From positions 12,682,155 through 12,746,154 of the forward strand of contig NC_069008.1 of NCBI RefSeq assembly GCF_001194135.2: a stretch of 64,000 nucleotides of DNA. Direction: 5' to 3'. Positions within the stretch are counted from its first letter, which is position 1, and each line of letters starts with the position of its first letter. Shown here one piece after another: positions 3,160 to 60,396 of this stretch. The translations under genes were made by a program, and so were the position numbers. This DNA is from Octopus bimaculoides. Lineage: Eukaryota. The notes beneath the pieces are model-generated. The model worked only from the letters and a program-made list of their open reading frames with translations, did no database searches and was not told the origin of the DNA.

Positions 3160-4500
3160 AGCATATAAACAGAAACAAAGTACATTTCGTCGTTTGTGTT
3201 TCCGAGTCTATTTTTATAATTTCTGTTGTTAAAGTTTACTTCGTGTGAAATTGCTTCTTCGTGCAGACGGTGTTCCAGCTTTATAGGCAGCTGAATTTAG
3301 GAGGGGAACAGAGTCTTGACGATGACCCAGGGTCTGGACGTCCCACAACTACCACCACAGAGGAAAACATTGATCATGTTCACCACTTGCTAATGAATGA
3401 CAAGCGATTGACTATAGATGAAATAGCCAATGCTGTTAGCATATCCCACAAGTTGAGAATATTCTGCACAATGAACTTGGCATGACGAAGGTTTCTGTTC
3501 AGACGTTTGGTGTAATTGAAAATATTTCACTATAAACTATATATGTAGCATAACAGGTAAGATATAATAATACAGTTATTTTAGTAAAGGTAGTTCAGCG
3601 TGAGTAATGTAAAACCTTTTGATGTTGTTTGCCTGATATTAATATTAATTCTATTCTCCACTACTTTAACTAAAATCAATTAAACAGATTTAGGCATAAC
3701 TATGCATGTGTGAAAAGGATATTTTGAAATAAAACGTTCGACAAATACTTTTCAAATTATGTATATTACGATTTTCTCGAATTTGATGTGTGCGCGAAAA
3801 ATAATGGTAGTGTTAATTCTCATACTTCAAACTGTATGAAGAAACAAAATCGAAGTTTGGGAATTATCCATCCACGCCCCTAAATTTTGTTTTCACATCA
3901 AATTCTCACACAATCGTAATCTACACTATTTGAAACAGATTTGTGAAAATTTTAATTTAAAAAAATTATCCAATTTTAACAATTGAATATTTTCTGAGAA
4001 AGCAAATCGAAACTCTTCTACACCCTTCCGAAAACATTTCTCACAACAAATTCCAATGGAATCCCAATCACCATCCAAAATATATCCCTGGAAAATCTCT
4101 GTGCGTAACAAGTATTTTCAGAAAGTTATGAAGAAGCAAATTCGGTGGGGCACACATCTGTAGGTATGCCCAAATTTAATCAATTAAAAAGATAAATCAA
4201 CGATCTAATTCTAGACACTCTCTAAACTACGATCTATGATTTTATAGGAACGTATTGTGAAGTTTCTGCTTATGAACATGTAATAATAGATTGATTGATA
4301 AACACATCCATACCATCACTTTGAAAATAAATTTAATATTTATTTACTTGGATATTTACCGAAAAGGTGTCACCCAAACCCCTTTTCTCTAATCACACAG
4401 ATATTTGACTTTCCGTATGCTAAACTTGTGAGAGTAAAAGTTATTAAGTTTGAAAATATCGTTAAGAAAAATAAATCAAAACTATGATCGATAGAATAAG
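3160..4500 (+). promoter_or_regulatory. Conserved ZNF 5' cassette copy 1: putative promoter, non-coding exon 1 (donor GT at 3557) and start of intron 1
   Basis: Begins TATAAACAGAAACAAAGTACATTTCGTCGTTTGTGTTTCCGAGTC and contains GCATAACAG|GTAAGATATAATAATACAG; homologous blocks at about 12550, 29770, 56490 (+) and 45220 (-). Confidence 0.6.
3265..3500 (+). mobile_element. Mariner transposase HTH-region fragment inside the cassette
   Basis: Reads DDDPGSGRPTTTTTEENIDHVHHLLMNDKRLTIDEIANAVSISH then LGMTKVS; absent from the other cassette copies. Confidence 0.8.
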
Positions 4501-5423
4501 CTTGTTGGTTTTATTTTGTTATTAAATGATTTCAGACCACAATATGGCGGAAAATAGAATTAATATGAATGTTTCACTTGGAACATCAAACGGTTTGAAT
4601 AATCAATGTTCACCATATCTTTTATTTGAGTTATTGAACTGTGACCATGCTGGGGCACCACATCCAAGAGTTTTAGTCAAATCACCCTCAGTATGTAAGT
4701 TTTTTTTGTACATCTGGTACTTATTCTAATGATAACTTATGCTGAACTTTTAAGTTACAGGGACGTAAACAGTCTAACACTGGTTTTCAACTGAGTAAGT
4801 GGGGTATAAACACAAAGACACCCTCCCCTACACTTGTATGTGTATCTATCTATCTATCTATCTATCTATAGGCATTGGTTAGCTTGTCTATTGTAGGAGA
4901 CACTTTGCCAAGGTGCCATGCTGTGGGACTGAACTTGAAACGACATGGTTGCAAGGCAAGCCTGTTAACCACACAGCCATGTCTGTTGCTGTAATTTACT
5001 TTACATCAAATGTAATGGTCAACTCTGGATTTTCAAATATAACACATCAACATTTCAGTTTAGACGTATTATCCTGTACATAAAAGGGTAAGGAAACATC
5101 ATTTTCCAATGTTAAATATTTCCACTTCTATATAATTGCTGTATCTTTGAGAGGCTCACATAATTCTATTATCCAAAGGACATTATTTATGTTTTTGACA
5201 ATTAACTGTTTTCAGTGCTTGATAAATAATATGGCATCAATGATCTCTAATCTAATAGATTAGTATTTTCAAAGGTTTTGTCAACTTCATTTGGTGATAA
5301 ACAACCTGTCTATATTGTAAGGTTTGGTTTGTCTAAGGTGTTACCAATTTTGTTACATGGTAAATGCCTTCTCTTTGCTCTAAGATTTGTGTTTTCAAAG
5401 GTTATCAATATACTCAGTAAATC

Positions 5424-5480
<57 letters not shown>

Positions 5481-6201
5481 NNNNNNNNNNNNNNNNNNNN
5501 NNNNNNNNNNNNNNNNNNNNNNNNNNNNNNNNNNNNNNNNNNNNNNNNNNNNNNNNNNNNNNNNNNNNNNNNNNNNNNNNNNNNNNNNNNNNNNNNNNNN
5601 NNNNNNNNNNNNNNNNNNNNNNNNNNNNNNNNNNNNNNNNNNNNNNNNNNNNNNNNNNNNNNNNNNNNNNNNNNNNNNNNNNNNNNNNNNNNNNNNNNNN
5701 NNNNNNNNNNNNNNNNNNNNNNNNNNNNNNNNNNNNNNNNNNNNNNNNNNNNNNNNNNNNNNNNNNNNNNNNNNNNNNNNNNNNNNNNNNNNNNNNNNNN
5801 NNNNNNNNNNNNNNNNNNNNNNNNNNNNNNNNNNNNNNNNNNNNNNNNNNNNNNNNNNNNNNNNNNNNNNNNNNNNNNNNNNNNNNNNNNNNNNNNNNNN
5901 NNNNNNNNNNNNNNNNNNNNNNNNNNNNNNNNNNNNNNNNNNNNNNNNNNNNNNNNNNNNNNNNNNNNNNNNNNNNNNNNNNNNNNNNNNNNNNNNNNNN
6001 NNNNNNNNNNNNNNNNNNNNNNNNNNNNNNNNNNNNNNNNNNNNNNNNNNNNNNNNNNNNNNNNNNNNNNNNNNNNNNNNNNNNNNNNNNNNNNNNNNNN
6101 NNNNNNNNNNNNNNNNNNNNNNNNNNNNNNNNNNNNNNNNNNNNNNNNNNNNNNNNNNNNNNNNNNNNNNNNNNNNNNNNNNNNNNNNNNNNNNNNNNNN
6201 N

Positions 6202-6385
6202 CGAAATGGTGTCTTTTATGTGCCACCCGCACAAGCCAGTCCAGGGGCACTGGCAACGATCTCGCTCGAAAATCCTACAGGAGCCAGTCAGGCGGTACTG
6301 GCAACGGCCACGCTCAAAATGGTGCATCTCATGTGCCACCCGCACAAGAACCAGTCCAGGGGCACTGGCAACGATCTTACTTGGC
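6202..6385 (-). mobile_element. Fragment of the (GAT)n-tailed SINE/RTE-derived repeat
   Basis: Internal repeat GGCAACGGCCACGCTCAAAATGGTG...CCAGTCCAGGGGCACTGGCAACGATCT shared with copies at 23830, 43760, 60072 and 62030. Confidence 0.75.
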
Positions 6386-6399
6386 TTATATATATTTAT

Positions 6400-6625
6400 G
6401 TGTGTGCGCCTGTGTTTGCCCCTCCACCGTCGCTTGACAACCGATGTTGGCACGTTTACATCCTTGTAACTTAGTGGTTTGGCAAAAGAGATCGATAGAA
6501 TAAGTATCAGGCTTACAAAGAATAAGTCCTAAGGTTGATTTCTTCAACTAAAAAATTCTTTAAGGCAGTGCTCCAGCATGGCCACAATCAAATGACTGAA
6601 ACAAGCAAAAGAAAAGAATAAAAGA
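6400..6625 (+). mobile_element. 3' half of a tRNA-derived SINE
   Basis: CGCTTGACAACCGATG...GATAGAATAAGTA...GTGCTCCAGCATGGCC...AATGACTGAAACAAG matches fuller copies at 44410-44725 and 56105-56465. Confidence 0.75.
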
Positions 6626-6920
6626 ATATATTATGATATGTGTGTGTGTGTATATGCGTGTATGTAAAAGTGAAGTGAGTAGCTTCCTCTTCTCTACTGA
6701 GATTTCATCCGACACATGTTGAACTGGATATTGACTACAGGCTGCCACAAATAAAGACCACTAAAAGAAAGCTTTCATTGATTCCATTGAAAAAAAAAAA
6801 AACTTATTTAACATGAAACATGAAGTCATAGAAAAGTAACCATATTTATTTTCTGAATTATATCTACTATATTATCATTATCCACTGTCCACTTTTTCAT
6901 GCTTGCATGAATCAGACAAA

Positions 6921-7516
6921 GGATCTTTTTTAAAACGGGGGCCACATTTTTCATTAATGATTTACGTAGTGCTTTTGGTACCGAAAGACTTTCAAACTTC
7001 GTATACTTATCTATTTTGTGTTATAGAACAGAAAAATATTTTTGTATTCGAATTTATTTCATGTAAAAAATTGTCTTATTTCGATAATTTCAACCAATCA
7101 CTGACGTCCACTCAGCCGATATACATTAAGTGCCGACTACATAAACAAACGATTCTTCGTTTTATTTGCTTTTTTCATTTTAAATTTGCTTTAACCCTAA
7201 CCCTAAGCCTAAGCCTAACCCTAACTCTAACCCTAGGGTTAGGGTTAGGGTTAGAGTTAGGGTTAGGGTTAGGGTTAATTGTTTCAGAATCGTTTGTTTA
7301 TGTAGTCGGCACTTAATGTATATCGGCTGAATGGACGTCAGTGATTGGTTGAAATTACAGAAATACGACAACTTTAACATGGAATAATTTATGGATTTCT
7401 TTTTTTTTTAAGAAGACTAAGAGAAAAAGATGTTTTATATGACACATTCTACCAGTGTTCCAAGTTTCAAAGTGTTTCGTTAATGAAAAATGTGGCCCCC
7501 GTTTTAAAAAAGATCC
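6921..7516. mobile_element. Foldback (MITE-like) DNA element with 8-bp TSD and central (CCCTAA)n/(TTAGGG)n
   Basis: Termini GGATCTTTTTTAAAACGGGGGCCACATTTTTCATTA and their reverse complement ending 7516; CAGACAAA at 6913-6920 and 7517-7524; inner arms about 7050-7165 and 7280-7390 are near-perfect inverted repeats. Confidence 0.9.
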
Positions 7517-7899
7517 CAGACAAAATTTGTGAAAGTAAATTTTCTTTTGCAGGATGCCTTTTCTGTCACCAACCTTCACCTGTTTCCAGACAAGGCTATA
7601 ATTCCCAAGGCTAGACATAGTTTTCAAAGAAAACTGGAAACAAACATCATTTGTATGATGATGATGCTCGTTTACAGCCATCATATGATGACAAGAACTG
7701 GGTACACTCAAACACACACACACACACACATTTGGTAGAGACTGGGTGTCTACAGAATCCACTCACAAAGTATTGGTCAACACAAGGCTATAGGAGACAG
7801 TTGGCCTTGGTTGCACCTGAGACCACATGATTAGGAAGCAAGCTTCTTAACCACATGAGCAAGCCTGTACAAATACATATATCTATTTATCTACACAAA

Positions 7900-8345
7900 T
7901 ATAAAATACATCTCGAAACAGTTCAGTTCAAGTAAATATTTATTTCTACAGTTTATCTCTATAAGAAATTGAGAAAAAATTTCCACTGTTATGTTTTAAG
8001 TATCCCCTATATCTTATACTGTTGTTTCTCTATTATTTCAGAATAACAAATGACATTGGCATCTAAGAATTGTATACATCATCAATATTTATTATTGTTT
8101 AAAGACTCGAGGAAAATGTGATGCAGGGCAGATGTAACTGTCCTTATATAAAACTATGGCAAAAGACTGGCAAATATATTTTCTGAACTGAGACAGAAAA
8201 CAGAATTGTTTTCTTGACTGTCTGGAATGTGTCCAATCCACCTCAGATATTGACAAAAATCACAGTAGTAGAAACGCGCTTCAGGAAAAAAATATGGACA
8301 CAAAAAGAAGACAAACATCTAAATTGTGGTGAGAAAAGAAAAATA
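7900..8345 (+). promoter_or_regulatory. Splice acceptor (AG at 8040-8041) and 5' UTR of ZNF-A exon 2, with uORF 8050-8121
   Basis: CTGTTGTTTCTCTATTATTTCAG|AATAACAAATGACATTGGCATC, homologous to 25217, 58382 (+) and 43325 (-). Confidence 0.7.
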
Positions 8346-9722
8346 ATGGAAAAAGAATTACGTGTGAATAAGGCAAAATTGAAAACACAGTTTAAAAGTA
8401 TTGATTTTCATAGTGATATGACTAAAGAGAAAGGAGAAACATCATATCCCTGTGATGTCTCTGGTAAATTATCCTCTGAAACTGGTCACTTAACAAAACA
8501 CAAATGTATTCATGTAGGAGAGAGACCATATTGCTGTGATATCTGTGGCATATCATTCTCGCAAAGAAATCACTTAACTGAACACAAACATACTCATACA
8601 GGTGAGAAGCCTTATCACTGTGATATCTGTGGTAAATCATTCTCTCAAAGAGGTAGCTTAACAACACACAGACGTATTCACACAGGAGAGAAACCATATT
8701 GGTGTGATATTTGTGGTAAATCATTCTCTGTAAGTAGTGTCTTAACTACTCACAAATACATTCATACAGGAGAGAAACCATATCAGTGTGATATTTGTGG
8801 TAGATCATTCTCTCGAAATGATTACTTAACTGGACACAGACGTATTCATACAGGAGAGAAACCATTTCAGTGTGATATTTGTGGTAAATCATTCTTTCAA
8901 AAAAACCACTTAAATGAACACAAACGAAGTCATACAGGAGAGAAACCACATTACTGTGATATTTGTGGAAAATCATTCACTCGAAGAAATCACTTGACTG
9001 AACACAAACATATTCACACTGGAAAGAAACCATATCACTGTAGGATTTGTGGAAAATCTTTCTCTCGATGTAGTGATTTAACTAAACACAGACATATTCA
9101 CACAGGAGAAAAACCATATCAGTGTGATATCTGTGATAAATCATTCTCTGAAAGCGATACCTTAACTACACACAAACGTATTCATACAGGAGAGAAGCCA
9201 TATTGCTGTGATATTTGTGGTAAATCATTCTCTCGAAATGATTATTTAATTGGACACAGACGTATTCACACAGGTGAGAAGCCATATCATTGTGATATCT
9301 GTGGTAAATCCTTCTCTCGAAGAAATCACTTAACTGAACACCAACATATTCACACAGGAGAGAAACCATATAACTGTGATATCTGTGGTAAATCGTTCTC
9401 TCGAAATTCTCTCTTAACTGAACACAAACGTATTCATACAGGAGAGAAACCATATCACTGTGATATCTGTGATAAATCATTCTCTAACAGCAGTAATTTA
9501 ACTAAGCACAAATATATTCACACAGGAGAGAAACCATATCACTGTGATATCTGTGGCAAATCATTCTCTGACAAAGATGCCTTAACTATACATAAACGTA
9601 TTCATACAGGAGAGAAACCATATCAATGTGATATCTGTGGTAAATCATTCTCTGTAAAAAGCTCCTTAAGTAGACACAAACCTATTCACAAAAGAGAGAA
9701 ACCTTATTGCTGCAATGTTTGA
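8346..9722 (+). CDS. C2H2 zinc-finger protein A (about 458 aa; 14 intact tandem fingers plus one degenerate N-terminal finger)
   Basis: Repeated CDICGKSFS...H...H with TGEKP linkers. First ATG is 8346 (MEKELRV...), matching the starts of the paralogues; the listed ORF start 8214 is TTG. Confidence 0.9.
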
Positions 9723-11859: not shown

Positions 11860-12549
11860 CTATCTATCACTCGTCCACCTTCGTTTGTTTCCGTAGAATT
11901 TATCAAATTAGAAAATGCATTTCCGTAGAATTTATCAAATTAGAAAATGCGTTTCCGTAGAATTTAAACAAATTAAATTCAGTTTAAACTTTATAAATAA
12001 ATATATTTCATTTCATGTTCAGTTTAAACTTTATAAATAAATNNNNNNNNNNNNNNNNNNNNNNNNNNNNNNNNNNNNNNNNNNNNNNNNNNNNNNNNNN
12101 NNNNNNNNNNNNNNNNNNNNNNNNNNNNNNNNNNNNNNNNNNNNNNNNNNNNNNNNNNNNNNNNNNNNNNNNNNNNNNNNNNNNNNNNNNNNNNNNNNNN
12201 NNNNNNNNNNNNNNNNNNNNNNNNNNNNNNNNNNNNNNNNNNNNNNNNNNNNNNNNNNNNNNNNNNNNNNNNNNNNNNNNNNNNNNNNNNNNNNNNNNNN
12301 NNNNNNNNNNNNNNNNNNNNNNNNNNNNNNNNNNNNNNNNNNNNNNNNNNNNNNNNNNNNNNNNNNNNNNNNNNNNNNNNNNNNNNNNNNNNNNNNNNNN
12401 NNNNNNNNNNNNNNNNNNNNNNNNNNNNNNNNNNNNNNNNNNNNNNNNNNNNNNNNNNNNNNNNNNNNNNNNNNNNNNNNNNNNNNNNNNNNNNNNNNNN
12501 NNNNNNNNNNNNNNNNNNNNNNNNATATATATATATATAAAATCAAAAA

Positions 12550-13453
12550 GCTTGTAAACAGAAACTTAGTACATTTCGCCGTTTGTGTTTCCGAGTCGAT
12601 TTTTAAAAATTTCTATTGTGAAAGTTTACTCCGGATTGAGTGGCGTAATGAAACAGATTTGGTGTAATTAAAGATGTTTCATTATAAACACACATTTATG
12701 TAGCATAACAGGTAAGATATAATAATGCAGGTATTTTAGTAAAAGTAGTTGGACATGGGTAATGTAAAACCATTTGATGTTGCTCGTCAGACACTGATAT
12801 TCATTGTAGTCTTCACCAGTTTAATCAATAAGGCATTAAAACAGAATGATTTTTCCTAGACACAACAAAATGATTAAACAGATTTAGACATAAGTACACA
12901 TGTGTGAAAACTGTATATTTTAAAATAAAACGTTCAAGAAATACTTTTAATATGGTGTACATTATGATTTTATTGAAATTTGACGGGTGGGCAAAAAATA
13001 ATGGCACACTTCATTAAAACGTATGAGGAAACAAAGTCGAGGTTTATGAATTATCCGACTTCCCGCTGAAGTTTGTTTTCACATCAAATTCCCACATAAT
13101 TGTAATTTGAAATGTATTTGAAGAAAATTTTATTTAATATATGTCCTCTTTGCAAAAAGTTATGAGGAAACAAATCAAAACACTTCTACACTCTTCCGAA
13201 AACATTCTTCACCACCAATTTCGATATAACAGTAATCTAGAGTACTCACAATGCATATCTAGAAAATTTAATCAAGAAATATGCATTTTTCAGTAAGTTA
13301 GGCAAAAACAAATTTGGTGAGGCACACATCTATAGATCTGCCATGGTTTAAACAACGATAAATCAACGCGCTTATTCTACACCATTCTCATAACTACTAT
13401 GTATGATTGTATAGAAGTTTGCTGTAAATTTAGATTCTGCTAATGAACGTGTA
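12550..13453 (+). promoter_or_regulatory. Conserved ZNF 5' cassette copy 2 (donor GT at 12712)
   Basis: AGCTTGTAAACAGAAACTTAGTACATTTCGCCGTTTGTGTTTCCGAGTC ... GCATAACAG|GTAAGATATAATAATGCAG; runs into an N gap. Confidence 0.6.
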
Positions 13454-13553
13454 NNNNNNNNNNNNNNNNNNNNNNNNNNNNNNNNNNNNNNNNNNNNNNN
13501 NNNNNNNNNNNNNNNNNNNNNNNNNNNNNNNNNNNNNNNNNNNNNNNNNNNNN

Positions 13554-14150
<597 letters not shown>

Positions 14151-16311: not shown

Positions 16312-17602
16312 TTGAGTGACATTAGACCCCAACAAACGCTCATAAATTAAATGCAGCTATCTCGGCCACAATCGTGGCTCGTCGTGCTTTATGTGTTAAA
16401 TAATAACTTCTAAACTGAAATGTTGATCTGCTGTTTATGAAAAGCCATGATAGACTGTTACTTGTGATATAGACGAAATTAATTGGTAAAATGAGAGTAA
16501 AGCGGCGTAATTAATTAGAAATATAAGAGGAAACCGATTGAGGAATACCTCATTAATTAATGATGTGCTGTTGTTTATTGTTGTTGTTGGCACTCCGTCG
16601 CTTACGACATCGAGGGTTCCAGTTGATCCGATCAACGGAACAGCCTGCTCGTGAAATTTTTTTTACGGAATTTACCGAACGCTGTACCTTAACAGCTGGT
16701 TGATCAGCTGTTCTAGTTTGGCAGTTCTGCGAGTCATACCGAAGATAGCCAAAATGACAATGATACTAATAATCTTTTCATAAAGATAATAATCTAACCT
16801 ACTTTTGACCCGAAATTTGGCAGGAGGGCATAAGTCGATTACAAGAACCCCTCTGCTTTGTTGCTTCTTTTTTTTCTACCTGGAATTTATGAAAGTCGAC
16901 CTGGGTGGAATTTGAACTTTGAGAGTAAAGACGTGTAGGGCACAGCCCATGGATTCATAGTAGACGAAATGAAGAGAGGGACTTTCACTGCAGACTAGCT
17001 AGCAAGCTGGTCCACAGAGAAGGGACTTCAGTTTGGGCAGGAGAGGCGCCTGGAGACTTAAATGGCTGATCGTACTCGCCCTGAAAGTGTGTCACCGATT
17101 GAAGCAAAATAAACAACACACCGACAAGCTGAATGATATACTGTTAAGCATTTTGTCCAGCATGCTAATGATTCTGCCTGTACATAATAGAACCCTTCGA
17201 AGTTACAGTAATCACATAGAAAGATTGAGAAAATATGTTCCCTCGTCTTAGATATATGAAACATTGATTGTTTTTGAAAGGTATGAAGAAACAAATTTAG
17301 GGTGTAGGTATGCCAGTTTTTCAATGCCTCAATGAACTCCGACCCTTGCAGACATTGACATTAAGCGGATGACAGTGTTGATGCTGTAAAATGTTGAATT
17401 ACTATGTCGTTTAATTATCCTCCTAATCTTAATGTTTCGTTTCCTTTTTCAGAATATCACATCAAGTTGTCATAAAAGAAATTTCTTCAATCAAATGTGC
17501 CTTTGATATTTTTATCAACTTTCATCAAACTAAAGAAAGCCGATATATTTATAAGAAGCCTTCATCAATACATCAACCTCTTTATATAAATATTCTCTCA
17601 TA

Positions 17603-19266
<1,664 letters not shown>

Positions 19267-20076
19267 NNNNNNNNNNNNNNNNNNNNNNNNNNNNNNNNNN
19301 NNNNNNNNNNNNNNNNNNNNNNNNNNNNNNNNNNNNNNNNNNNNNNNNNNNNNNNNNNNNNNNNNNNNNNNNNNNNNNNNNNNNNNNNNNNNNNNNNNNN
19401 NNNNNNNNNNNNNNNNNNNNNNNNNNNNNNNNNNNNNNNNNNNNNNNNNNNNNNNNNNNNNNNNNNNNNNNNNNNNNNNNNNNNNNNNNNNNNNNNNNNN
19501 NNNNNNNNNNNNNNNNNNNNNNNNNNNNNNNNNNNNNNNNNNNNNNNNNNNNNNNNNNNNNNNNNNNNNNNNNNNNNNNNNNNNNNNNNNNNNNNNNNNN
19601 NNNNNNNNNNNNNNNNNNNNNNNNNNNNNNNNNNNNNNNNNNNNNNNNNNNNNNNNNNNNNNNNNNNNNNNNNNNNNNNNNNNNNNNNNNNNNNNNNNNN
19701 NNNNNNNNNNNNNNNNNNNNNNNNNNNNNNNNNNNNNNNNNNNNNNNNNNNNNNNNNNNNNNNNNNNNNNNNNNNNNNNNNNNNNNNNNNNNNNNNNNNN
19801 NNNNNNNNNNNNNNNNNNNNNNNNNNNNNNNNNNNNNNNNNNNNNNNNNNNNNNNNNNNNNNNNNNNNNNNNNNNNNNNNNNNNNNNNNNNNNNNNNNNN
19901 NNNNNNNNNNNNNNNNNNNNNNNNNNNNNNNNNNNNNNNNNNNNNNNNNNNNNNNNNNNNNNNNNNNNNNNNNNNNNNNATCCCCGTATTATCCTACGTA
20001 GATTGATGAAAAAAAAAATTCGGAAAAAGTTTTTTAAAAGTTTTAAAAAGTACCCTACTTTAATTTCACATGAATT

Positions 20077-20440: not shown

Positions 20441-22060
20441 TTCACATGAATTACTTTGTCATATTAACTGCAGGAAATTACTCTGAAAGATATCTTTGCA
20501 GAAAGGTGAGTAGATTAATTACATTATGTTATCGCAGTTTTGTGAGATTTAGCTGTTATTTCTAGCATGTAAATAGCCTGCTTGGTGAGGGGGCGGAATT
20601 GAAATTTTTCAATTGGGATTCCGTAAAAAAAATAAAAAATAAGGGGGGGAAGGTTCAGATTACATATAAGTACCAGTGAAACACTGGAGTTGATGTTATC
20701 AACTAGCCCCCTCCCCTAAAATGGTTGCCCTTGTTGCAAAATTTGAAACCATTATTTACACAACATTCTTGCAGTGTTAGATAAATCTTTCTCAATTTAC
20801 TGTTTCACATAATNNNNNNNNNNNNNNNNNNNNNNNNNNNNNNNNNNNNNNNNNNNNNNNNNNNNNNNNNNNNNNNNNNNNNNNNNNNNNNNNNNNNNNN
20901 NNNNNNNNNNNNNNNNNNNNNNNNNNNNNNNNNNNNNNNNNNNNNNNNNNNNNNNNNNNNNNNNNNNNNNNNNNNNNNNNNNNNNNNNNNNNNNNNNNNN
21001 NNNNNNNNNNNNNNNNNNNNNNNNNNNNNNNNNNNNNNNNNNNNNNNNNNNNNNNNNNNNNNNNNNNNNNNNNNNNNNNNNNNNNNNNNNNNNNNNNNNN
21101 NNNNNNNNNNNNNNNNNNNNNNNNNNNNNNNNNNNNNNNNNNNNNNNNNNNNNNNNNNNNNNNNNNNNNNNNNNNNNNNNNNNNNNNNNNNNNTATTTAT
21201 AAAAAAAAAATCGTGTGCATGTTATTTTTAACGTAAGTTTTCTTATGATGGCTTCTCTTTTCTGCGTATTACTTCATAAATCTACGGATGCACATACGCA
21301 CATACTAGAGAAAAATGCGTGGACATTGGAATTAGACACTGAGGGAAAATGGCTGTAACTTTTTTATTTTTTAATTTTGACGATTTTCGTTTTCGATAAT
21401 GTGTTCTATATGTCACGGTCATGCGATTCCCCCTAAAAAAAAATTTGGACCCCCCCTTCCCTCCCACACACACCTAACTCTAACCCTAACCAGATTTGGC
21501 TGTTATTTCTAGCATGTAAATAGCCTGCTTGGTGAGGGGGCGGAATTGAAATTTTTCAATTGGGATTCCGTAAAAAAAATAAAAAATAAGGGGGGGAAGG
21601 TTCAGATTACATATAAGTACCAGTGAAACACTGGAGTTGATGTTATCAACTAGCCCCCTCCCCTAAAATGGTTGCCCTTGTTGCAAAATTTGAAACCATT
21701 ATTTACACAACATTCTTGCAGTGTTAGATAAATCTTTCTCAATTTACTGTTTCACATAATTCAATTATTTACACAACATGATTGTAGCCTTAAAAATGTG
21801 CTGAATCATCATTACTGTGTCAGACAAAATACCGCTCAGCATTTTGTCCTGTCTTAACATTCTGAGTTCAAATTCCATTGTTTGAGTTAGCTTTTCATCC
21901 TTTCAGTGTCAGTAAATAACTACCAGAGTAGCACTAGGGTTGATGTAATCAACTAGCCCCATCCCACCAAATTTCAGGTTTTGTGCCTATATTCTTTTCT
22001 ACTCTAAGTACAAGGCCCGAAATTTGTTGATTAGATCTATCATGGTGTTTGAGTGGTTTT

Positions 22061-23280: not shown

Positions 23281-23829
23281 CACACTCACACACACATGTA
23301 TATGTCTGTACCTGCGAGTGTCTTTGTGTATTTGTGCATGGCCCTTGTGTTGAAATTATGTGATGGTTGTAAACGAGTGTCATTGTCTTACAAGCAGTGT
23401 TGTTTGTTTCCAGTCTTCCATGATAAACATGTCTGGTTGTGAGAAAATAGAACTGTGCCTGGAAACAGGTGAAGTTTGGTGACAGGAAAGCTTTCCAGCC
23501 GTAGAAAATCTGCTACAGCACATTGCACATTAACCAATGCAAGCATTGTAAAGTGGACATTAAAGGTTGACGATGGTGGCAGTGACAGCTCAGGAGCGAC
23601 TGATCAAAATAAGCCAATTCCAATCATTTACTTTACAAAACTATAATATTGTAATGATGGTCCAATTGGGAATCTTACAGTACATAGAATTTTTATATTT
23701 TCCCTTCCTGACGCTTCTAAATTTGTTAGAATTAATATAGGACTCCATATTACAATCAATTTACTCAATTAGTAAATCTGTGTCCTTAGCATTATCACCA
23801 TAACAATGTACTTATATATTATGATATAT

Positions 23830-25109: not shown

Positions 25110-25550
25110 AGGTAAATGTTTATTTCTACAGCTTATCTCTATAAATATACTAAAATTTATTCTGTTGTATTTTATGTATCTCCTGTATCTTACACTGTTG
25201 TTTCTCTACTATTTCAGAATAACAAATGACACTGGCATCAAAGAATTATATACATCATTTAAATCGGATATATTAGGGAGAAAGTTATATGGAACTCATG
25301 TAAGCCTCCTTATATAAATTTATTGTAAATTGCAGGCAAATATTTTTCCTGAACTGAGATTGATAACCATGATCATTTTCTTGGCTATCTGGAATGTGTA
25401 CAAGGATGATTTTGCTTTTGAATTAAACTTGGATAGATTTAAACCAGTTTCCATATTGACAGTGATCACAGTAGAAGAAATAATTACTGAGAATATATGT
25501 ATATGAAAAGAAGATAAACATCTCTGAATTGTAATGAGAGAAGAAAATTA
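25110..25550 (+). promoter_or_regulatory. Splice acceptor (AG at 25216-25217) and 5' UTR of ZNF-C, with uORF 25226-25276
   Basis: CTGTTGTTTCTCTACTATTTCAG|AATAACAAATGACACTGGCATC; uORF MTLASKNYIHHLNRIY*. Confidence 0.7.
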
Positions 25551-26561
25551 ATGTCGAACAAGAATAAGTTTGAATCAGAACCACAGTTTAAAAGTATTGA
25601 TTTACATTGTGATATGAATAAAGAGAAAGGGAAAACATCAGACCACTGTGATATCTGTGGGAAATCATTCTCTGAAAGTTGTAACTTAATAACACACAAA
25701 TACATTCATACAGATTTGAAATCATATCATTGTGATGTTTATGGTAAATCATTCTCTCAAAGCAGTCGCTTAACTGAACAAATACAAAGTCACAAAACAG
25801 AGAAACCATATCAGTGTGACATCTGTGGTAAATCATTCTCTTATAGAAATAACATAGCTGCCCACAAGCGTATTCATACAGGTGAGAAACCATATTGTTG
25901 TGATGTCTGTGGTAAATCATTTTCTCGAAATGGTCAATTAACTAGACACAAACAAAATCATACAGGGGAGAAATTATATCGCTGTGATGTCTGTGGTAAA
26001 TCATTCTCTCAAAGTGGTGACTTAACTGGACACAAACGAAGTCATACAGGAGAGAGACCATATCAGTGTGATATCTGTGGTAAATCGTTCTTTCAAAATT
26101 ATAAATTAACTACCCACAAACGGAGTCATACAGGAGAAAAACCGTATCTCTGTGATATCTGTGGTAGGTCATTCACTCAAAACGGTACTTTAACTGAACA
26201 CAAACAAATCCATACAGGAAAGAAACTATATCACTGTGGTGTCTGTGGTAAATCATTCTCTGTACATAAAGTCTTAACTAATCATATGCGTATTCATACA
26301 GGTGAGAAACCATATAAGTGTGATATCTGTGGTAAATCATTCTCTGTAAATAGTGTCTTAACCACACATAAACGTACTCATACAGGAGAGAAGCCATATC
26401 AGTGTGATATCTGTGCGAAATCATTCTCTCAAAGTGTTCATTTAACTAAGCACAAACGTATTCACACAGGAGAAAAACCTTATTGCTGTGATATTTGTGG
26501 TAAATCATTCTCTCAAAGGATTCACTTAACAAGACATGTAGCTATTCATGTAGGACAATAG
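25551..26561 (+). CDS. C2H2 zinc-finger protein C (336 aa; 10 intact fingers plus one degenerate)
   Basis: ATG start, leader with [13 protein letters not shown]-linked fingers, AATAAA at 26602-26607. Confidence 0.9.
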
Positions 26562-28726: not shown

Positions 28727-29769
28727 CAATTATGGAGTGAATTTTAGGGTTCAGAGTCTGGTTTGGTCTGGACCTCCAAGTGGAGAAATACTGAGATGAG
28801 GTGATGAACAGGGTGGCCAGTCTCACCTTGAAATTTACTGAGGAAGCTGTCCCTGAAAGTTCGAGCTAAGGTGGTGAATGCGTACATTGCATCTGTCATC
28901 TATTACTGCTTGACCATCATCTCTTGCCCACGCAAAATATTCGACTTTCTGTTTTTTTCTTAATGAAACGCATGCAGTTGTACTTCTGAAAATTTACCAA
29001 AAAATACAAATCCAAAACCGGGAGAAAAAAGAGGAAGAAAGAAAGAAAAAAACAACACATCAATTCAACAATCAGTTATTACTTTCTCACTGCTGGTTAA
29101 AATAGTTATTTGTATTTCTCCATAAATTTATTTGTTTACCATCCTCCAATCTATGTTTATTGTGACTAAACTTATTTCTTAGTGCCATTCACAGCAAAAC
29201 TTAAAACACCAATGTATGTGTATGGGGAAACGACACGTACTAAATCATCTTCACAGTCACCTGGGTAAACGCACTCTCCATCTGAGTAATTACTTTTGAG
29301 AAACATTTAAATTAAAAATGACACTTCAAAGCGAGACTTATACCTCCTCCTTTAAAAACGTATTCAGAATGATGGTACCAAATGATATTGTACCATCCGT
29401 CACAATACTAAGTTTATCCGATATTGAGATATATACGGAATTCCCCTGATTTTGTGTCTTAAGTAATTTTTTTTTTATAATTCCACTACATTTAAAAAGT
29501 CGATGTTTGTGAATTATCCGATTTCACCCCATATTTTTTTATCACTTTATTTTAAGTAAAATATTTTGATATACCGCATTTTAACGTGTATAAGGAACCC
29601 ACTTAAATTTGGAAAAAAGGTTTTGTAAGGGACTATAATACTATCTATGTATAAAAAACGCCCATATTTTAAAACCTAATTTTTGATTAAAAAAAAGAAA
29701 AGAAAAGGAAAAAGGATTCCTTATGCCCGTTAAAATACCGTAATACATATATTTTCTTTTGGAAGCTTA

Positions 29770-30776
29770 TAAAGAGAAACTAAGTACATTTCGCCGTTTG
29801 TATTTCCGAGTCGGTTTTTATAATTTCTATTGTGAAAGTTAATTTCGTGTTGAATGGCGCCTTGAAACATACATTTGATGTAATTCAAGATATTTCATTA
29901 GAAACACAGATTTATGCTGCATAACAGGTAAGATATAATAATACAAATATTTTCGTAAAAGTAGTTGGACATGGGTTAGGTAAAACCTTGTTGCTTGGCA
30001 GACATTGATAGTAATTCTATTCTCCATCCTTTGTCTCATGATTAGACATGAGTACACGTGTGTCAAAAATAAATATTTTAAAATAAGACGTTTAACAAAT
30101 GCCCTGTAGATTGTGTACATTACGATTTTATCGGAACTTGATGTTTGACAAGAAAATTCACAAATTTTGTAAGACGTATGAGGAAACAAAGTCGTGGTTT
30201 GTGAATTGTCCGATTTCACCCCATATTTTGTTTTCACATTAGATTCCCACATAATCATAATCTACACTACCGGAAACTGATTTGTGGAAAAAAAAATTAT
30301 CAAATAATTACCTAGTTTTTACGAAGTTAAAAAGTCGAAACTCCTCTACACCCTTCCGAAAAATGTTTCACAAATTCTGTTATAGCCCCAATTTGCATCC
30401 TCTAAAATATATCTGGGAATTTTCGGTAAGAGATAAGTATTTTGCTGAAAGTAATGAAGAAACATAATTAGTGCGGCACACATCTGTAGTTATGCCCAGA
30501 TTTAATCAATAACAAGATCGAGTATATTCTGGACGATTCTCTCAACTACGATGTGTGATTGTATAGAAATATAATGTCAAGATAATTTCTGTTAATGAAC
30601 GCGTAATAATGGATTGGTAAGCATTTCTATTCCTTCACTCTGAAAATATATTAAATATTTTTCTTTTTGCATATTCATATTGTCATTCAAATCTCTGTTC
30701 TCTCATAACACAAAAATCTTTGACATTCCATATACCGACCACGTATGATTCATAAGTTACTATATATGAAAATATC
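29770..30776 (+). promoter_or_regulatory. Conserved ZNF 5' cassette copy 3 (donor GT at 29928), no adjacent coding exon
   Basis: AAGCTTATAAAGAGAAACTAAGTACATTTCGCCGTTTGTATTTCCGAGTC ... GCATAACAG|GTAAGA; ends abruptly at an LTR-like repeat. Confidence 0.6.
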
Positions 30777-41899: not shown

Positions 41900-43330
<1,431 letters not shown>

Positions 43331-43407
43331 TAATAAAGAAACAACTGTATGAAATATAAGGGCTACTCAAAATACAAGAGTGAAAATTTTACTATATTTC
43401 TTTTGAG

Positions 43408-44129: not shown

Positions 44130-45220
44130 CATCCATTGGCAGAAAATAACTTTACATTACATTTCTATAAAATCATAGATCATAGTTTAGAGAATGGTGT
44201 ACAGTAAGTTCGTTGATTTATCTTGTTATTGATTAAACCTGAGTGTAGTTACAGATGTGTGTATTCCAAAAAAATTTCTTTCTTCATAACTTTATGAAAA
44301 ACACTTATTTCTTACTGAAATTTTCCAAGAATACATTGTAGATGGTACAGATTATAGTTATATCAGAATTTGTTGTGAAAACTTCTTCTGAAAGAGTTTC
44401 GTTCATTCCCACTGCGTGGCACTTTGGGCTGAGCAAAGCCTTGTGAGTGGATTTGGTAGACGGAAACTGAAAGAAGCCCGTTGTATATATATATATGTAT
44501 GTATGTATGTGTGTGTACATGTTTGTGTGTCTGTGTTTGTTCCCCCAACATCGCTTGACAACCGATGGTGGTGTGTTTACGTCCCCGTAACTTAGCGGTT
44601 CGGCATAAGAGACCGATAAAATAAGTACTAGGCTTACAAAGAATATGTCCTGGGGTCGATTTGCTTGACTAAAAAGGCGATGCTCCAGCATGGCTGCAGT
44701 CAAATGACTGAAACAAGTAAAAGAGTATTTGTTTGCTATTAACTTTCTGGTTTCACTCAATTATGTGGGAATTTGATGTGAAAACAAAATTTGGGGGTGG
44801 GGTCGGATAATTCACAAACCTCAACCAGGTTTCTACATACAGTTTGATGAAATGTGTGAATTATCACCACTCTTCTGTTTTCTCTGCACACATGAAATTC
44901 CAATGTACACCACCTGAAAGGTATTTGTTGAAAATTTTATTTAAAAATATATATTTTGCACACACGTGTAATTAATATCAACGTCTAACTAGTAATATCA
45001 AAACGTTTTACATTACTCATGTCCATCTAGTTTTACTAAAATATCTGTATTATTATATCTTAACTGTTATGCTGCATAAAAATGTGTTTATAGTAAAATA
45101 GCTTTAATTACAAATGTTTGTTCTGTGGTGCCATCCAACCCAAACTTTTGCAACAGAAATTATAAAAACTCAGCAACACAAGCAATGAAATGAAATTCGT
45201 ATCAGTTTATAAGCTCCTAC
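44130..45220 (-). promoter_or_regulatory. Conserved ZNF 5' cassette copy 4 (donor mutated to TT at 45063), interrupted by a SINE at about 44410-44725
   Basis: Minus strand AGCTTATAAAC...TTTTATAATTTCTGTTG...GCATAACAG|TTAAGATATAATAATACAG. Confidence 0.6.
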
Positions 45221-56465: not shown

Positions 56466-56489
56466 GAGAAAGATGTTTTTTTCTCCTGA

Positions 56490-56850
56490 ACAAAAATTAA
56501 GTAAATTTTGACGTTTGTGTTTCCGAGTCGGTTTTTATAATTTCTGTTACGAAAGCTTGAATGGCGCCTGGACACTCATTTTTTGTGGTGGAAGATATTT
56601 CGCTGTAAATACAGATTTACGCAGCATAGCCGGTAAGATATAATACAGATATTTTAGTAAAACTAATTTGACATGAGGGTGGAGGTAAAGAATACGGACA
56701 CCACTCGTTTTCAGCGAAACAAAACCCTAAACACCCGGCGTACGTATTTTCTCGGAATTTGATGAGTTCACGAAAAATAAGGTTTGCGTTCTTGAAAACG
56801 TTTGAACGAACAAAATTTAGATTTGTGAATCAACGGGAATTTATACGACT
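56490..56850 (+). promoter_or_regulatory. Conserved ZNF 5' cassette copy 5 (donor GT at 56633), upstream of ZNF-E
   Basis: CGTTTGTGTTTCCGAGTCGGTTTTTATAATTTCTG ... GCAGCATAGCCG|GTAAGATATAATACAGATATTTTAGTAAA. Confidence 0.6.
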
Positions 56851-58259: not shown

Positions 58260-58891
58260 ACGTCTTGAAACTGTTCACTTGTTTAGGTAAATGTTTATTT
58301 CTATAAGAAATATACTAAAATTTATACTGTTATATCTTAAGTATCCCCTATATCTTATACTGTTGTTTCTCTACTATTTCAGAATAACAAATGACATTGG
58401 CATCAAAGAATTATATAGATCATCAATATTTATTTTCATTCAAAGACTCAAGAAAAATGTTACACAGAACAGACATAACTCTCATTATATAAATCTTCAG
58501 CAAATTAGATGCAAATATTTTCTCTGAACTCATATTGATGACAGTAGTTCTTTTTTTTTTTTTTTTTGACTGTGTAGAATATAAACAAGATGTTTTGCAC
58601 CTTTGTAGATTTAGACAAAAATCACATTCAGAGAAATATCTATTAGGAATGGAAGGTAAAACTATACAGAAAATAAGCATCTCTGTGTTGGGGTGGGAAA
58701 AGAAAAATAATCCTTTCTACAATAGATACAAGGTCTGAAATTTACTGGGAGGGGATTAGTTGATATATCAATCCCAATGGTTCACTGGTACTTAATGGAA
58801 GGCAAAGTTGACCTCAGCAGAATTTGAACTAAGCATTTTACCCAGCGTGCTAACGATTCTGCCAGCTTGCCAACTTGGGAAAAGAAAAATA
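58260..58891 (+). promoter_or_regulatory. Splice acceptor (AG at 58381-58382) and 5' UTR of ZNF-E, with uORF 58391-58492
   Basis: CTGTTGTTTCTCTACTATTTCAG|AATAACAAATGACATTGGCATC; uORF MTLASKNYIDHQYLFSFKDSRKMLHRTDITLII*. Confidence 0.7.
58712..58875 (-). mobile_element. SINE inserted at the ZNF-E start codon, 18-bp TSD
   Basis: TGGGAAAAGAAAAATAAT at 58694-58711 and 58876-58893; insert matches the GCTGGCAGAA..GTTAGCACGC family. Confidence 0.85.
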
Positions 58892-60112
58892 ATGGAAAAT
58901 GAATTACGCGAGGAAGAGGTTAAATTCAAACCACAGTTTAAAAGTACCAATTTTCCTAGTCATTTAAACAAAAAGAAAGGAAAACCATTGCACCGATGTA
59001 ATATTTGTGGTAAATTGTTCTCTAAATCTTATCTCTTAACTAATCACAAATGTATTCATACAGGAGAGCAGCCATATCGCTGTGGTATCTGTGGTAAATC
59101 ATACTCTGGATCTAGCATGTTAGCAATACACAAACGTATTCACACAGGAGAGAAACCATATCATTGTGATATCTGTGGTAAAGCATTCTCTCAAAGTGGT
59201 CAAGTAACAACACACAAACGTAGTCATACAGGTGAGAAACCATATTGTTGTGATATTTGTGGTAAGTCATTCTCTCGAAGTGGTGCTTTAACTGGACACA
59301 AACGAAGTCATACAGGAGAGAAACCTTATCATTGTGATATCTGCAGTATGTCATTCTCTGAAAGAGGTACCTTAACAAAACACAAACATATCCATACAGG
59401 AAAGAAACCCTATCAGTGTAATATCTGTGGTAAATCTTTCTCTTCAAAGGGTAACTTAACTGAACACAAAAGAAGTCACACAGGAGAGAAATTACATCAC
59501 TGTGATATCTGTGGTAAATTATTCTCTTCAAAGAGTAGCTTAACTGAACACAACCGTAGTCACACAGGCGAGAAACCACATCACTGTGATATCTGTGGTA
59601 AATTATTCTCTCGTAGCAACTGCCTAGCTAAGCACAAACGAAGTCATACTGGAGAGAAACCACATCACTGTGATATCTGTGGTAAATCATTCTCTAGAAG
59701 TGATTACTTATCAGTGCACAGACGTATTCATATAGATGGGAAACTATATCAGTGTGATATCTGTGGTAAATCATTTCCTCGAAATAATCAATTAACTGTG
59801 CACAAACAAATTCATACAGGTGAGATGCCATATCGCTGCAATATCTGTGGTAAATCATTCTCTAGAAGTGATTACTTAACAGTGCACAAACGTATTCATA
59901 CTGGTGAGAAACCATGTCGTTGTGATATCTGTGGTAAATCATTCTCTCGAAATGATCAATTAACTGTGCACAAACGAGTTCATACAGGTGAGAAGCCATA
60001 TCGTTGTGATGTCTGTGGTAAATCATTCTCTGTAAGAAGTCACTTACCGAGACACAAGCGTATTCATACAGTGTCATCATCATCATCATTTAACGTCCGC
60101 TTTCCATGCTAG
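58892..60112 (+). CDS. C2H2 zinc-finger protein E (about 406 aa; 13 fingers; repeat-derived C-terminus)
   Basis: ATG at 58892 ([18 protein letters not shown]...); TGEKP-linked fingers; ends [19 protein letters not shown]. Confidence 0.88.
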
Positions 60113-60350: not shown

Positions 60351-60354
60351 GCAA

Positions 60355-60396
<42 letters not shown>

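What the first reader, a model, noticed from the sequence alone, without database searches (positions are those of the whole stretch)
3160..3560. A portable non-coding exon 1/promoter cassette that travels with the ZNF genes
Seen: five homologous blocks (3160+, 12550+, 29770+, 56490+, 45220-) share a TATA-like AGCTTATAAACAGAAAC (degenerate in the 56490 copy), GTACATTTCGCCGTTTGTGTTTCCGAGTC and GCATAACAG|GTAAGA. Four lie upstream of a ZNF array in the same orientation, including the inverted one. The GT donor is intact in four copies and mutated only in the pseudogene copy. Inference: the duplication unit is promoter + non-coding exon + intron + one coding exon, giving the cluster a common regulatory program. 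The cassette may itself be transposon-derived.
Basis: partly seen in the sequence, partly recalled or inferred. Interest (0 to 1): 0.7.

Follow-up and report, generated by a model that had tools for sequence, protein, structure and literature searches.

The report
Shared first exon of duplicated ZNF genes
The five repeated blocks are copies of the promoter-proximal region and short non-coding first exon of a locally duplicated family of zinc-finger genes, copied along with the whole gene and not moving on their own, which is the ordinary outcome of tandem gene duplication.

Summary
Five homologous blocks lie at 3160-3556 (split by a 262-bp transposon fragment), 12549-12711, 29764-29927, 56489-56632 (+) and 45215-45064 (-). 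Each ends in CAG|GTAAGA; the GT is TT only in the decayed inverted copy.

The gene-structure reading is supported:
- A conserved branch point, pyrimidine tract and AG acceptor (8041|8042, 25216|25217, 58382|58383, 43325 on -) sits 0.3-0.5 kb upstream of each ZNF start codon.
- In 256 kb around the window, 13 of 15 blocks have a co-oriented acceptor and ZNF exon within 11 kb downstream. Random placement gives a mean of 5.8, and none has an opposite-strand acceptor.
- Four copies on another chromosome (C29) show the same layout.
- One intronless copy on chromosome C5 joins block to exon 2 exactly at the predicted sites, a DNA record of that splice.

"Portable" and "transposon-derived" are not supported:
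- There are only about 50 copies in 2.3 Gb, nearly all in C28 and C29 ZNF regions. The true transposon fragment inside copy 1 gives 2349 candidates on all chromosomes.
- Homology runs on into the intron (+375) and upstream (to -640 or further) with no fixed edges.

The start site and TATA assignment stay untested, as does a common regulatory programme. This is ordinary, whole-gene duplication.

The parts
3160..3243 (+). Copy 1, 5' half of the first-exon block (TATA-like 17-mer at 3160-3176, conserved 29-mer at 3180-3208).
   Evidence: profile positions 5-160.
3244..3505 (+). Dispersed-repeat fragment inserted into copy 1. Its open frame gives a weak, sub-threshold match to a Tc1/mariner-type HTH domain. 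It is not part of the family block.
   Evidence: Present in copy 1 only. 2349 first-look candidates on all chromosomes at about 83-85% identity. HTH_32 E=3.4e-5, below the Pfam cut-off.
3506..3556 (+). Copy 1, 3' half of the first exon, ending ...GCATAACAG. The donor GT is at 3557-3558.
   Evidence: profile positions 156-280.
3557..8041 (+). Intron of gene 1 (4.5 kb). The first ~0.4-0.9 kb and the last ~0.15 kb are homologous to the paralogues' introns.
8042..9722 (+). Gene 1 exon 2. 5'UTR 8042-8345 and CDS 8346-9722 (458 aa, 14 C2H2 fingers). The 3' end of the exon was not determined.
   Evidence: Acceptor ...ctattatttcag|AATAACAAATGAC. ORF. Pfam zf-C2H2, 14 stretches.
12549..12711 (+). Copy 2 of the first-exon block. 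Donor GT at 12712-12713. The sequence upstream is an assembly gap (12043-12524).
13554..13803 (+). Two-finger ZNF end directly behind a 100-N gap (13454-13553). It is the probable remainder of copy 2's exon 2, with the acceptor hidden in the gap.
   Evidence: The pairing is inferred.
25122..26558 (+). Acceptor block (AG at 25215-25216, exon 2 from 25217) and 10-finger ORF (ATG at 25551) of a further family gene. No first-exon block was found for it. Assembly gaps at 19267-19979 and 20814-21193 lie upstream.
29764..29927 (+). Copy 3, an orphan first-exon block with an intact donor (GT at 29928-29929). Intron homology runs about 0.85-1 kb, then is lost. No acceptor or ZNF exon follows on this strand before the next unit (acceptor block at 58281).
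45064..45215 (-). Copy 5 (inverted). The first exon ends at 45064 and the donor GT is mutated to TT (45063-45062).
41978..43325 (-). Decayed exon 2 of the inverted unit. The acceptor AG ends at 43325 (acceptor block 43159-43411), and only one recognisable finger is left (41978-42337). This is a pseudogene.
56489..56632 (+). Copy 4 of the first-exon block. The TATA-like part is lost and the 29-mer has 3 mismatches. Donor CCG|GTAAGA, with GT at 56633-56634.
58383..60112 (+). Gene 4 exon 2. 5'UTR 58383-58891, including a roughly 0.3-kb insertion. CDS 58892-60112 (13 fingers).
   Evidence: Acceptor ...ctactatttcag|AATAACAAATGAC. ORF. Acceptor block.

Best explanation
The blocks are paralogous copies of the 5' end of one gene type: about 0.2-0.6 kb of upstream (promoter) sequence, a non-coding first exon of at least 99 nt (probably about 130-160 nt), and its 5' splice site. 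They belong to a lineage-specific subfamily of poly-C2H2 zinc-finger genes.

Each gene has two exons. Exon 1 is entirely 5'UTR. A single intron follows, about 0.6-1 kb in the shortest copies and up to 10.7 kb where transposons have inserted. Exon 2 carries about 300 nt of 5'UTR and the whole finger-array CDS.

The family grew by segmental (tandem and inverted) duplication of whole genes in clusters on two chromosomes, so the 5' module was copied passively with each gene. Within the module, two stretches are kept above the neutral level of the intron: the 29-mer region, and the 50 nt around the donor. This fits constraint on a start-site-proximal element and on the splice site.

Shown: homology, copy number and distribution, linkage and co-orientation with exon 2, conserved splice signals, and one intronless copy carrying the exact exon1-exon2 junction.

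Inferred: that the 29-mer/TATA-like region is the core promoter, where transcription starts, and that the block is the first exon and not an internal one.

The genome looks like Octopus bimaculoides (2.34 Gb, 145,327 sequences, C2H2 clusters). That identification is my inference and was not tested.
For: - Five copies in the window, against 0 expected by shuffling.
- The family profile finds 15 full copies in the 256 kb around the window.
- The donor CAG|GTAAGA is intact in 13 of 15 copies, and the 13 columns TAACAGGTAAGAT are the best-conserved run of the alignment.
- Twenty acceptor blocks with a TACTAAA-like branch point, pyrimidine tract and AG lie 0.15-0.5 kb upstream of ZNF ORFs. The AG is kept even across an 11-bp indel.
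- Thirteen of 15 blocks have a co-oriented acceptor within 11 kb downstream. Random placement gives a mean of 5.8 and a maximum of 12 in 5000 trials. None of the 15 has an opposite-strand acceptor.
- Donor-half remnants with an intact GT lie 3.2-3.3 kb upstream of two further genes, so 17 of 20 acceptors have an upstream block or remnant: 13 clear pairs, copy 2 if it is assigned to the acceptor at 25122, one block at the acceptor-block fragment 235200-235245, and the two remnants.
- Four C29 copies have the acceptor block 0.7-1.0 kb downstream, and CDICGKSFS fingers follow in two of them (L017, L020).
- The spliced-junction 28-mer occurs once in the genome, on C5, and 0 times in the reversed control.
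- A chimeric exon1+exon2 query aligns there as one 293-nt piece across the junction. Every other locus breaks at the junction.
- Conservation peaks at 0.86 at -125..-101 and at -25..+24 relative to the donor. It stays above 0.5 from -325 to +375, over a background of about 0.4.
- CpG observed/expected is 1.0 in the exon and 1.9 at the 29-mer, against 0.49 for the region.
- No conserved ORF or reading phase exists in the block, and there is no Rfam match.
Against: - No transcript, CAGE or chromatin data could be consulted, so the transcription start site is unknown.
- The intronless C5 copy shares detectable homology only from about -99 relative to the donor. The 29-mer and the TATA-like motif are not detectably part of that RNA-derived copy. 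They could therefore be promoter and not exon, or the copy could be 5'-truncated.
- The TATA-like motif is a real TATAAA in only about a third of family members.
- A T-rich tract followed by AG precedes the block in many copies. An internal-exon reading with a further upstream exon is therefore not excluded.
- There is only one intronless copy. Two other junction variants gave nothing.
- Distance matrices of exon 1 and the acceptor block are not correlated (Mantel p about 0.35). The phylogeny is star-like and carries little signal. One pair is 98% identical at the acceptor but 79% at exon 1. Co-duplication is thus shown by synteny, not by congruent trees.
Confidence: 0.85

Rival explanations
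1. The block is, or derives from, a mobile element: a portable promoter/exon cassette that inserts upstream of ZNF arrays independently of gene duplication.
For: Its size is compact. An orphan copy with no exon 2 sits at 29764. An isolated 115-nt fragment lies on chromosome C3. One gene pair is 98% identical at the acceptor but only 79% at exon 1.
Against: DNA searches found only 32-40 candidates and about 50 distinct places, nearly all on C28 and C29 in or near ZNF regions. A real transposon fragment in the same window gives 2349 candidates on every chromosome. There are no fixed termini: homology grades into intron and upstream sequence, and its extent differs between pairs (-54 to -645 upstream, +16 to +1217 downstream). 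A second upstream block is also found only next to these copies. No terminal repeats or target-site duplications were seen. The orphan copy keeps about 0.85-1 kb of intron homology, which is what a truncated gene would leave.
Confidence: 0.04
2. The block is an internal 5'UTR exon. The true promoter and first exon lie further upstream, and the T-rich tract plus AG just before the TATA-like motif is a 3' splice site.
For: Many copies read TTTTTCTAG|G or TTGGAG|C immediately before the block. A second conserved block lies 300-800 nt upstream of 7 of 15 copies. The isolated C3 fragment begins at almost exactly this boundary.
Against: That putative acceptor is only about 0.62-0.72 conserved, whereas the real exon 2 acceptor columns are mostly >=0.75-0.9. 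Conservation falls off gradually upstream, with no step. The flank of the C3 fragment matches nothing in the cluster. The upstream block has no evident donor. The intronless C5 copy shows no extra upstream exon sequence. What precedes its homology matches no part of the family.
Confidence: 0.1
3. The block is a non-transcribed regulatory element (enhancer or insulator) or a small RNA gene, and the GTAAGA is coincidental.
For: Conservation continues about 70-150 nt past the 'donor' at 0.7-0.76. CpG is not depleted.
Against: The intronless C5 copy joins the last ~99 nt of the block to exon 2 precisely at the GT and AG. This is very hard to explain unless the block is transcribed and spliced. Nothing matches in Rfam. 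Conserved acceptors need a donor, and this is the only conserved one upstream.
Confidence: 0.02

Closest known systems
Tandemly duplicated KRAB-ZNF gene clusters of mammals (e.g. human chromosome 19)
   Same: Lineage-specific, locally clustered poly-C2H2 genes amplified by segmental duplication of whole genes. Paralogues share homologous 5'UTR exons and promoters, and the whole finger array sits in one large last exon. This rests on established knowledge. The exon layout is also described in PMC10547256.
   Different: There is no KRAB or other N-terminal effector domain or exon here. The leader before the fingers is about 35 aa with no Pfam domain. Genes have two exons instead of four or five, and the shared upstream exon is entirely non-coding.
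FiNZ-ZNF genes of cyprinid fish (Wells et al. 2023, PMC10547256)
   Same: Hundreds of recently duplicated ZNF genes share a first exon conserved enough that one morpholino targets 447 of 684 genes. The structure is two exons, with the finger array in the second.
   Different: The FiNZ first exon is coding: it holds the start codon and the FiNZ domain. Here exon 1 has no conserved ORF, and translation starts about 300 nt into exon 2.
Cephalopod C2H2 expansions (PMC9068888; PMC12513265)
   Same: The same kind of gene and the same genomic setting: hundreds to thousands of C2H2 genes in chromosomal clusters. The window very probably belongs to one of these clusters.
   Different: PMC12513265 contains no occurrence of the words exon, UTR, promoter or intron. 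In PMC9068888 I read only the C2H2, zinc-finger and scaffold passages. So I found no description of the shared 5' exon/promoter module or of the roughly 50-member subfamily it defines.
Clustered protocadherin variable first exons of vertebrates
   Same: Repeated promoter-plus-first-exon units arranged in tandem, each with its own conserved promoter element.
   Different: In vertebrate protocadherins many first exons splice to shared constant exons. Here each block normally has its own exon 2 immediately downstream. Only the orphan copy at 29764 could in principle behave that way, and this was not tested.

Membership tests
5' non-coding exon of a two-exon C2H2 ZNF gene | A functional 5' splice site at the 3' end of the block. 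| tested here: met
   CAG|GTAAGA is intact in 4 of 5 window copies and 13 of 15 cluster copies, and it is the most conserved run of the alignment. The exact junction is preserved in the intronless copy on C5.
5' non-coding exon of a two-exon C2H2 ZNF gene | A matching downstream acceptor on the same strand, leading into the ZNF ORF. | tested here: met
   A conserved branch point, pyrimidine tract and AG lie 0.15-0.5 kb upstream of the ORFs. Thirteen of 15 blocks pair with one within 11 kb (p<=2e-4), and none has an opposite-strand acceptor. The C29 copies show the same layout.
5' non-coding exon of a two-exon C2H2 ZNF gene | No conserved coding capacity. | tested here: met
   Only short, non-conserved uORFs are present, with no shared ATG or phase into the donor. 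The start codon lies in exon 2 in the context ATAATGG.
5' non-coding exon of a two-exon C2H2 ZNF gene | The block is present in mature transcripts (direct RNA evidence). | not testable with these tools
   No RNA-seq or cDNA data are available, and annotation of the source genome is withheld. The only indirect evidence is the processed copy on C5.
Core promoter (TATA box plus start site) inside the block | A conserved TATA box about 25-35 nt upstream of a mapped transcription start site. | tested here: inconclusive
   The 17-mer is A/T-rich in all copies but reads TATAAA in only about a third of 15 family members, with column identity about 0.72. The start site is unmapped. The RNA-derived C5 copy places it at or upstream of -99. 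CpG non-depletion is consistent with a promoter.
Transposable element or TE-derived mobile cassette | High or dispersed copy number, independent of host gene context. | tested here: not met
   About 50 places, nearly all in C28 and C29 ZNF regions, against 2349 candidates on all chromosomes for the transposon fragment in copy 1.
Transposable element or TE-derived mobile cassette | Defined termini (terminal repeats, target-site duplications, sharp homology edges). | tested here: not met
   The extent of homology differs from pair to pair and decays gradually on both sides. The upstream block at -300..-800 is also co-duplicated.
Structured non-coding RNA gene | A match to a known RNA family. | tested here: not met
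   An Rfam E-value scan of four copies with flanks returned only low-complexity mir-297 noise far below threshold. No fold analysis was run.

The most novel reading that the evidence does not exclude
The 29-mer/donor module is a shared cis-regulatory unit under selection that coordinates the cluster. It could work, for example, through promoter choice among tandem first exons, with orphan units such as 29764 acting as alternative first exons that splice into a downstream paralogue's exon 2. It could instead be a common binding site, perhaps for one of the cluster's own ZNF proteins. The wider acceptor/5'UTR family (at least 385 candidate loci) against only about 50 exon 1 copies would then reflect promoter replacement as the step that founds new ZNF subfamilies.
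Probability: 0.1. Interest if true: 0.6.

Novelty: new member of a known kind. Interest (0 to 1): 0.25.

Why it matters
The finding gives a correct two-exon gene model for a roughly 50-member zinc-finger subfamily. Exon 1 is non-coding, there is one intron, and all coding sequence is in exon 2.

It also gives a short conserved sequence (the 29-mer plus the donor region) that can serve as a handle. That handle could be used to annotate these genes, to design family-wide probes or knock-down reagents, and to ask whether the paralogues are co-regulated.

The result shows that the repetition comes from gene duplication, not from a new mobile element. Biologically this is the expected by-product of tandem duplication, so its value lies mainly in annotation.

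Tried and rejected
- **More genome sequence.** I tried to fetch the whole C28 cluster (12.54-13.11 Mb) and the C29 flanks. The census therefore rests on 256 kb of contiguous sequence, 3-kb loci and coordinates only.
- **Profile search of the whole genome.** A sequence-only model (R1) was built but is not accepted for this genome. I used DNA and pattern searches instead.
- **Annotation lookup.** The window's ZNF protein could not be looked up because records of the source genome are withheld.
- **Protein homology search.** A search with the N-terminal 120 residues, meant to find orthologues in other cephalopods, was swamped by vertebrate poly-ZNF proteins and was useless.
- **Tree congruence.** Distance matrices for exon 1 and the acceptor block showed no signal. 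Divergence is star-like and Mantel p is about 0.35.
- **3' boundary of the unit.** An alignment anchored on stop codons was uninformative, because arrays differ in finger number and decayed fingers follow the stops.
- **Rfam scan.** Nothing was found.
- **Extending the C5 copy upstream.** The 159 nt read by pattern search (-219 to -61 relative to the junction) show no significant homology beyond -99.
- **Other junction variants.** Two further spliced-junction patterns had no genomic match.
- **Coding first exon.** I considered and rejected this reading.

Full report
**1. The observation**

- The 29-mer occurs four times on the + strand at <=3 mismatches (3180, 12569, 29784, 56501), with none in 100 shuffles.
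- The TATA-like 17-mer occurs at 3160, 12549, 29764 and 45215(-), and is missing from the 56490 copy.
- GCATAACAG|GTAAGA occurs in all five copies, and GT is TT only in the minus-strand copy.

A five-way alignment shows real homology. A profile built from 16 family members finds exactly these five copies in the window.

Two corrections are needed. First, the block given at 3160-3560 is long only because a 262-bp insert (3244-3505) splits an otherwise ~165-bp block. Second, homology does not end at the donor. It runs on at about 70% for 0.4-0.9 kb.

**2. What surrounds the blocks**

The window is eukaryotic, AT-rich (GC about 0.22-0.45 across 2-kb windows) and has many assembly gaps. It carries open C2H2 finger arrays at 8187-9719, 17555-18748, 25518-26558 and 58796-60109 (+), and remnants at 13554-13803 (+) and 41978-42337 (-). 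Pfam confirms 14 fingers in the first array.

A second conserved block lies 0.15-0.5 kb upstream of the arrays. It contains a TACTAAA-like branch point, a pyrimidine tract and an AG...CTGTTGTTTCTCTACTATTTCAG|AATAACAAATGACATTGG. The acceptors fall at 8041|8042, 25216|25217, 58382|58383 and, on the minus strand, 43325. The AG is retained even in paralogues with an 11-bp indel at the boundary. The first in-frame ATG with a good context (ATAATGG) lies about 300-500 nt inside this exon.

**3. The wider locus**

The window is C28:12,682,155-12,746,154 of a 2.34-Gb assembly. That stretch holds 15 full first-exon blocks, 20 acceptor blocks and about 20 finger arrays.

- Thirteen of the 15 blocks are followed on the same strand by an acceptor block and ZNF ORF at 0.45-10.7 kb, median about 2.5 kb.
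- Random placement of 15 oriented points gives a mean of 5.8 and never reached 13 in 5000 trials. No block has an opposite-strand acceptor downstream.
- Two of the genes that seemed to lack a block keep a remnant of its donor half with an intact GT, 3.2-3.3 kb upstream.
- Three other acceptors without a detected block have assembly gaps upstream.

In the window:
- Copy 1 pairs with the 14-finger gene.
- Copy 4 pairs with the 13-finger gene.
- Copy 5 pairs with a decayed exon 2.
- Copy 2 is followed, after 741 bp of intron homology and a 100-N gap, by the last two fingers of an array.
- Copy 3 is an orphan. Its intron homology lasts about 0.85-1 kb and then gives way to unrelated and transposon-like sequence.

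**4. Genome-wide distribution**

Two DNA searches and one exact two-anchor pattern found about 50 distinct places. The reversed control pattern gave none.
- On C28 they lie at 11.8-13.1 Mb and 16.3-16.6 Mb.
- On C29 they lie at 0.70-1.43, 4.13-4.16, 10.9 and 12.0 Mb.
- There are also two small unplaced contigs and one 115-nt fragment on C3.

These counts are lower bounds. On C29, four copies for which I held 1.5 kb of flank have the acceptor block 0.7-1.0 kb downstream on the same strand, and CDICGKSFS-type fingers follow in two of them. Further C28 coordinates also pair up: 12864363+ with 12867115+, and 12862440- with 12855357-.

By contrast, the 262-bp insert of copy 1 gives 2349 first-look candidates on every chromosome. 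That is what a dispersed element looks like under the same search. The acceptor/5'UTR block is also much more widespread than exon 1, with 385 candidates on several chromosomes.

**5. Direct sequence evidence for splicing**

I searched the genome for the spliced product itself: the last 14 nt of the block joined to the first 14 nt of exon 2.
- It occurs once, at C5:10002607-10002634(-), as GTGTAGCGTAACAG|AATAACAAATGACA, with 2 mismatches. The reversed control gave 0.
- A 567-nt chimeric query (block of copy 3 plus exon 2 of gene 1) aligns at that C5 locus as a single 293-nt piece covering query 111-403, straight across the junction at 208|209.
- Every other genomic match stops or starts at the junction.

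A precise loss of the intron at GT...AG is the signature of a reverse-transcribed spliced RNA. The block's last ~99 nt are therefore exon, and they are spliced to exon 2 at the predicted sites.

Reading 159 nt further upstream at C5 by pattern search showed no significant similarity to the 29-mer or the TATA-like region. Either transcription starts near -99 or the copy is 5'-truncated. Two other junction variants had no genomic match.

**6. Conservation anatomy**

Mean pairwise identity across 14 paralogues was measured relative to the donor.
- It peaks at 0.86 at -125..-101, the 29-mer.
- It peaks at 0.83-0.86 at -25..+24, the donor.
- It is 0.62-0.72 from -200 to -126, which includes the TATA-like motif.
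- It is 0.5-0.6 out to -325 and to +375.
- Beyond that it sits at about 0.4, the alignment background.

Some pairs remain colinear to -640 or beyond. A further block at about -300..-800 occurs only upstream of these copies, in 7 of 15. There are thus no fixed cassette edges.

Overall identities are 0.78 for exon 1, 0.80 for the acceptor block and 0.71 for the aligned intron, in a star-like pattern. This fits one burst of duplication.

CpG observed/expected is 0.49 for the region, 1.0 in the exon and 1.9 at the 29-mer, which is consistent with a promoter-proximal state. No ORF or reading phase is conserved in the block, and Rfam finds nothing.

**7. Interpretation**

The best-supported model is a two-exon gene whose entire 5' module was copied with it during tandem and inverted segmental duplication. 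The module comprises the upstream region, the non-coding exon 1 and the donor.

The words 'portable' and 'transposon-derived' are not supported by copy number, distribution or boundaries.

Whether the 17-mer is a working TATA box is open. It reads TATAAA in only about a third of the members, and the start site is unmapped.

An internal-exon alternative keeps about 10%. In it, a T-rich tract plus AG precedes the block. That putative acceptor is much less conserved than the real one at exon 2.

A shared regulatory programme is untested. PMC12513265 reports that paralogues from one cephalopod C2H2 expansion often sit in different co-expression modules.

The donor-mutation/pseudogene link does not generalise. 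A second GT->TT copy precedes an open 17-finger ORF.

**8. Comparison and novelty**

The closest known situations are mammalian KRAB-ZNF clusters and cyprinid FiNZ-ZNF genes. In the latter, the first exon is conserved across hundreds of paralogues (PMC10547256). Here the shared exon is non-coding and there is no effector-domain exon.

The genome is probably Octopus bimaculoides. This rests on its size, its number of sequences, and its C2H2 clusters as described in PMC9068888. It is my inference and was not tested. PMC12513265, a paper on cephalopod C2H2 expansions, does not mention exons, UTRs or promoters.

This is a new, modest member of a well-known kind. Its main use is for annotation and as a handle on this subfamily, and its interest is low.

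Noticed in passing
window 3244-3505 (+): A 262-bp fragment of a very abundant dispersed repeat sits inside the first exon of an otherwise intact 14-finger gene. It gives 2349 candidates on all chromosomes at about 83-85% identity, and its open frame shows a weak Tc1/mariner-type HTH_32 match. If the exon is still used, the 5'UTR carries transposon sequence.
   Followed up: partly
G000:C5:10002426-10002839 (-), outside the window: An intronless copy of a family transcript, with exon 1 joined to exon 2 at the exact splice sites (78% identity over 293 nt). Homology to exon 1 begins about 99 nt before the junction. Whether it has a poly(A) tail, target-site duplications or a finger array could not be read.
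   Followed up: partly
window 29764-30780 (+): An orphan promoter/first-exon unit with an intact donor and about 0.85-1 kb of intron homology, but no exon 2 of its own. It is followed by retroelement-like ORFs (31.4-34.2 kb, minus strand) and other insertions. It could be a truncated gene or an alternative first exon for a downstream paralogue.
   Followed up: partly
window 35203-36248 vs 54747-53699: A 1.1-kb inverted repeat pair (75% identity) brackets the segment that holds the inverted pseudogene unit (41.9-45.3 kb). It may be two opposite copies of a transposon, or the substrate of the inversion.
   Followed up: no
window 39606-40235 (-): An ORF with a PIF1-like helicase domain (E=3.4e-25), suggesting a Helitron-type element fragment between the ZNF units.
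   Followed up: no
C28:12605086-12607012 vs 12620827-12618909 (outside the window): Two neighbouring genes in opposite orientation are 98% identical across the acceptor block and 86% across exon 2, but only about 70-79% at exon 1. Either a recent partial duplication or gene conversion covered exon 2 and not the 5' module.
   Followed up: partly
C28:12665159-12665398 (-), outside the window: A second family copy has the same GT->TT donor change as the window's pseudogene copy, yet lies upstream of an open 957-codon frame with 17 fingers. Donor loss does not always accompany ORF decay.
   Followed up: partly
genome-wide: The exon 2 acceptor/5'UTR block has at least 385 candidate loci on several chromosomes (C28 at 2.1, 5.7 and 14.5-15.7 Mb; C5, C10, C21). 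The first-exon block has only about 50. Many related ZNF genes therefore appear to use a different or unrecognisably diverged first exon.
   Followed up: no
window 17555-19139 (+): A 12-finger array plus further finger fragments with neither the family acceptor block nor a first-exon block upstream, and with no assembly gap in the 3.7 kb before it. It may be a truncated or differently structured ZNF gene.
   Followed up: no
window 23772-24107, 57234-57838, 60136-60393, 62043-62345: Many copies of a short interspersed repeat whose translation reads ...LQSDLAEFLQLDALPNANHSESVVGAFTCH..., together with abundant (TA)n and (TG)n tracts next to assembly gaps.
   Followed up: no
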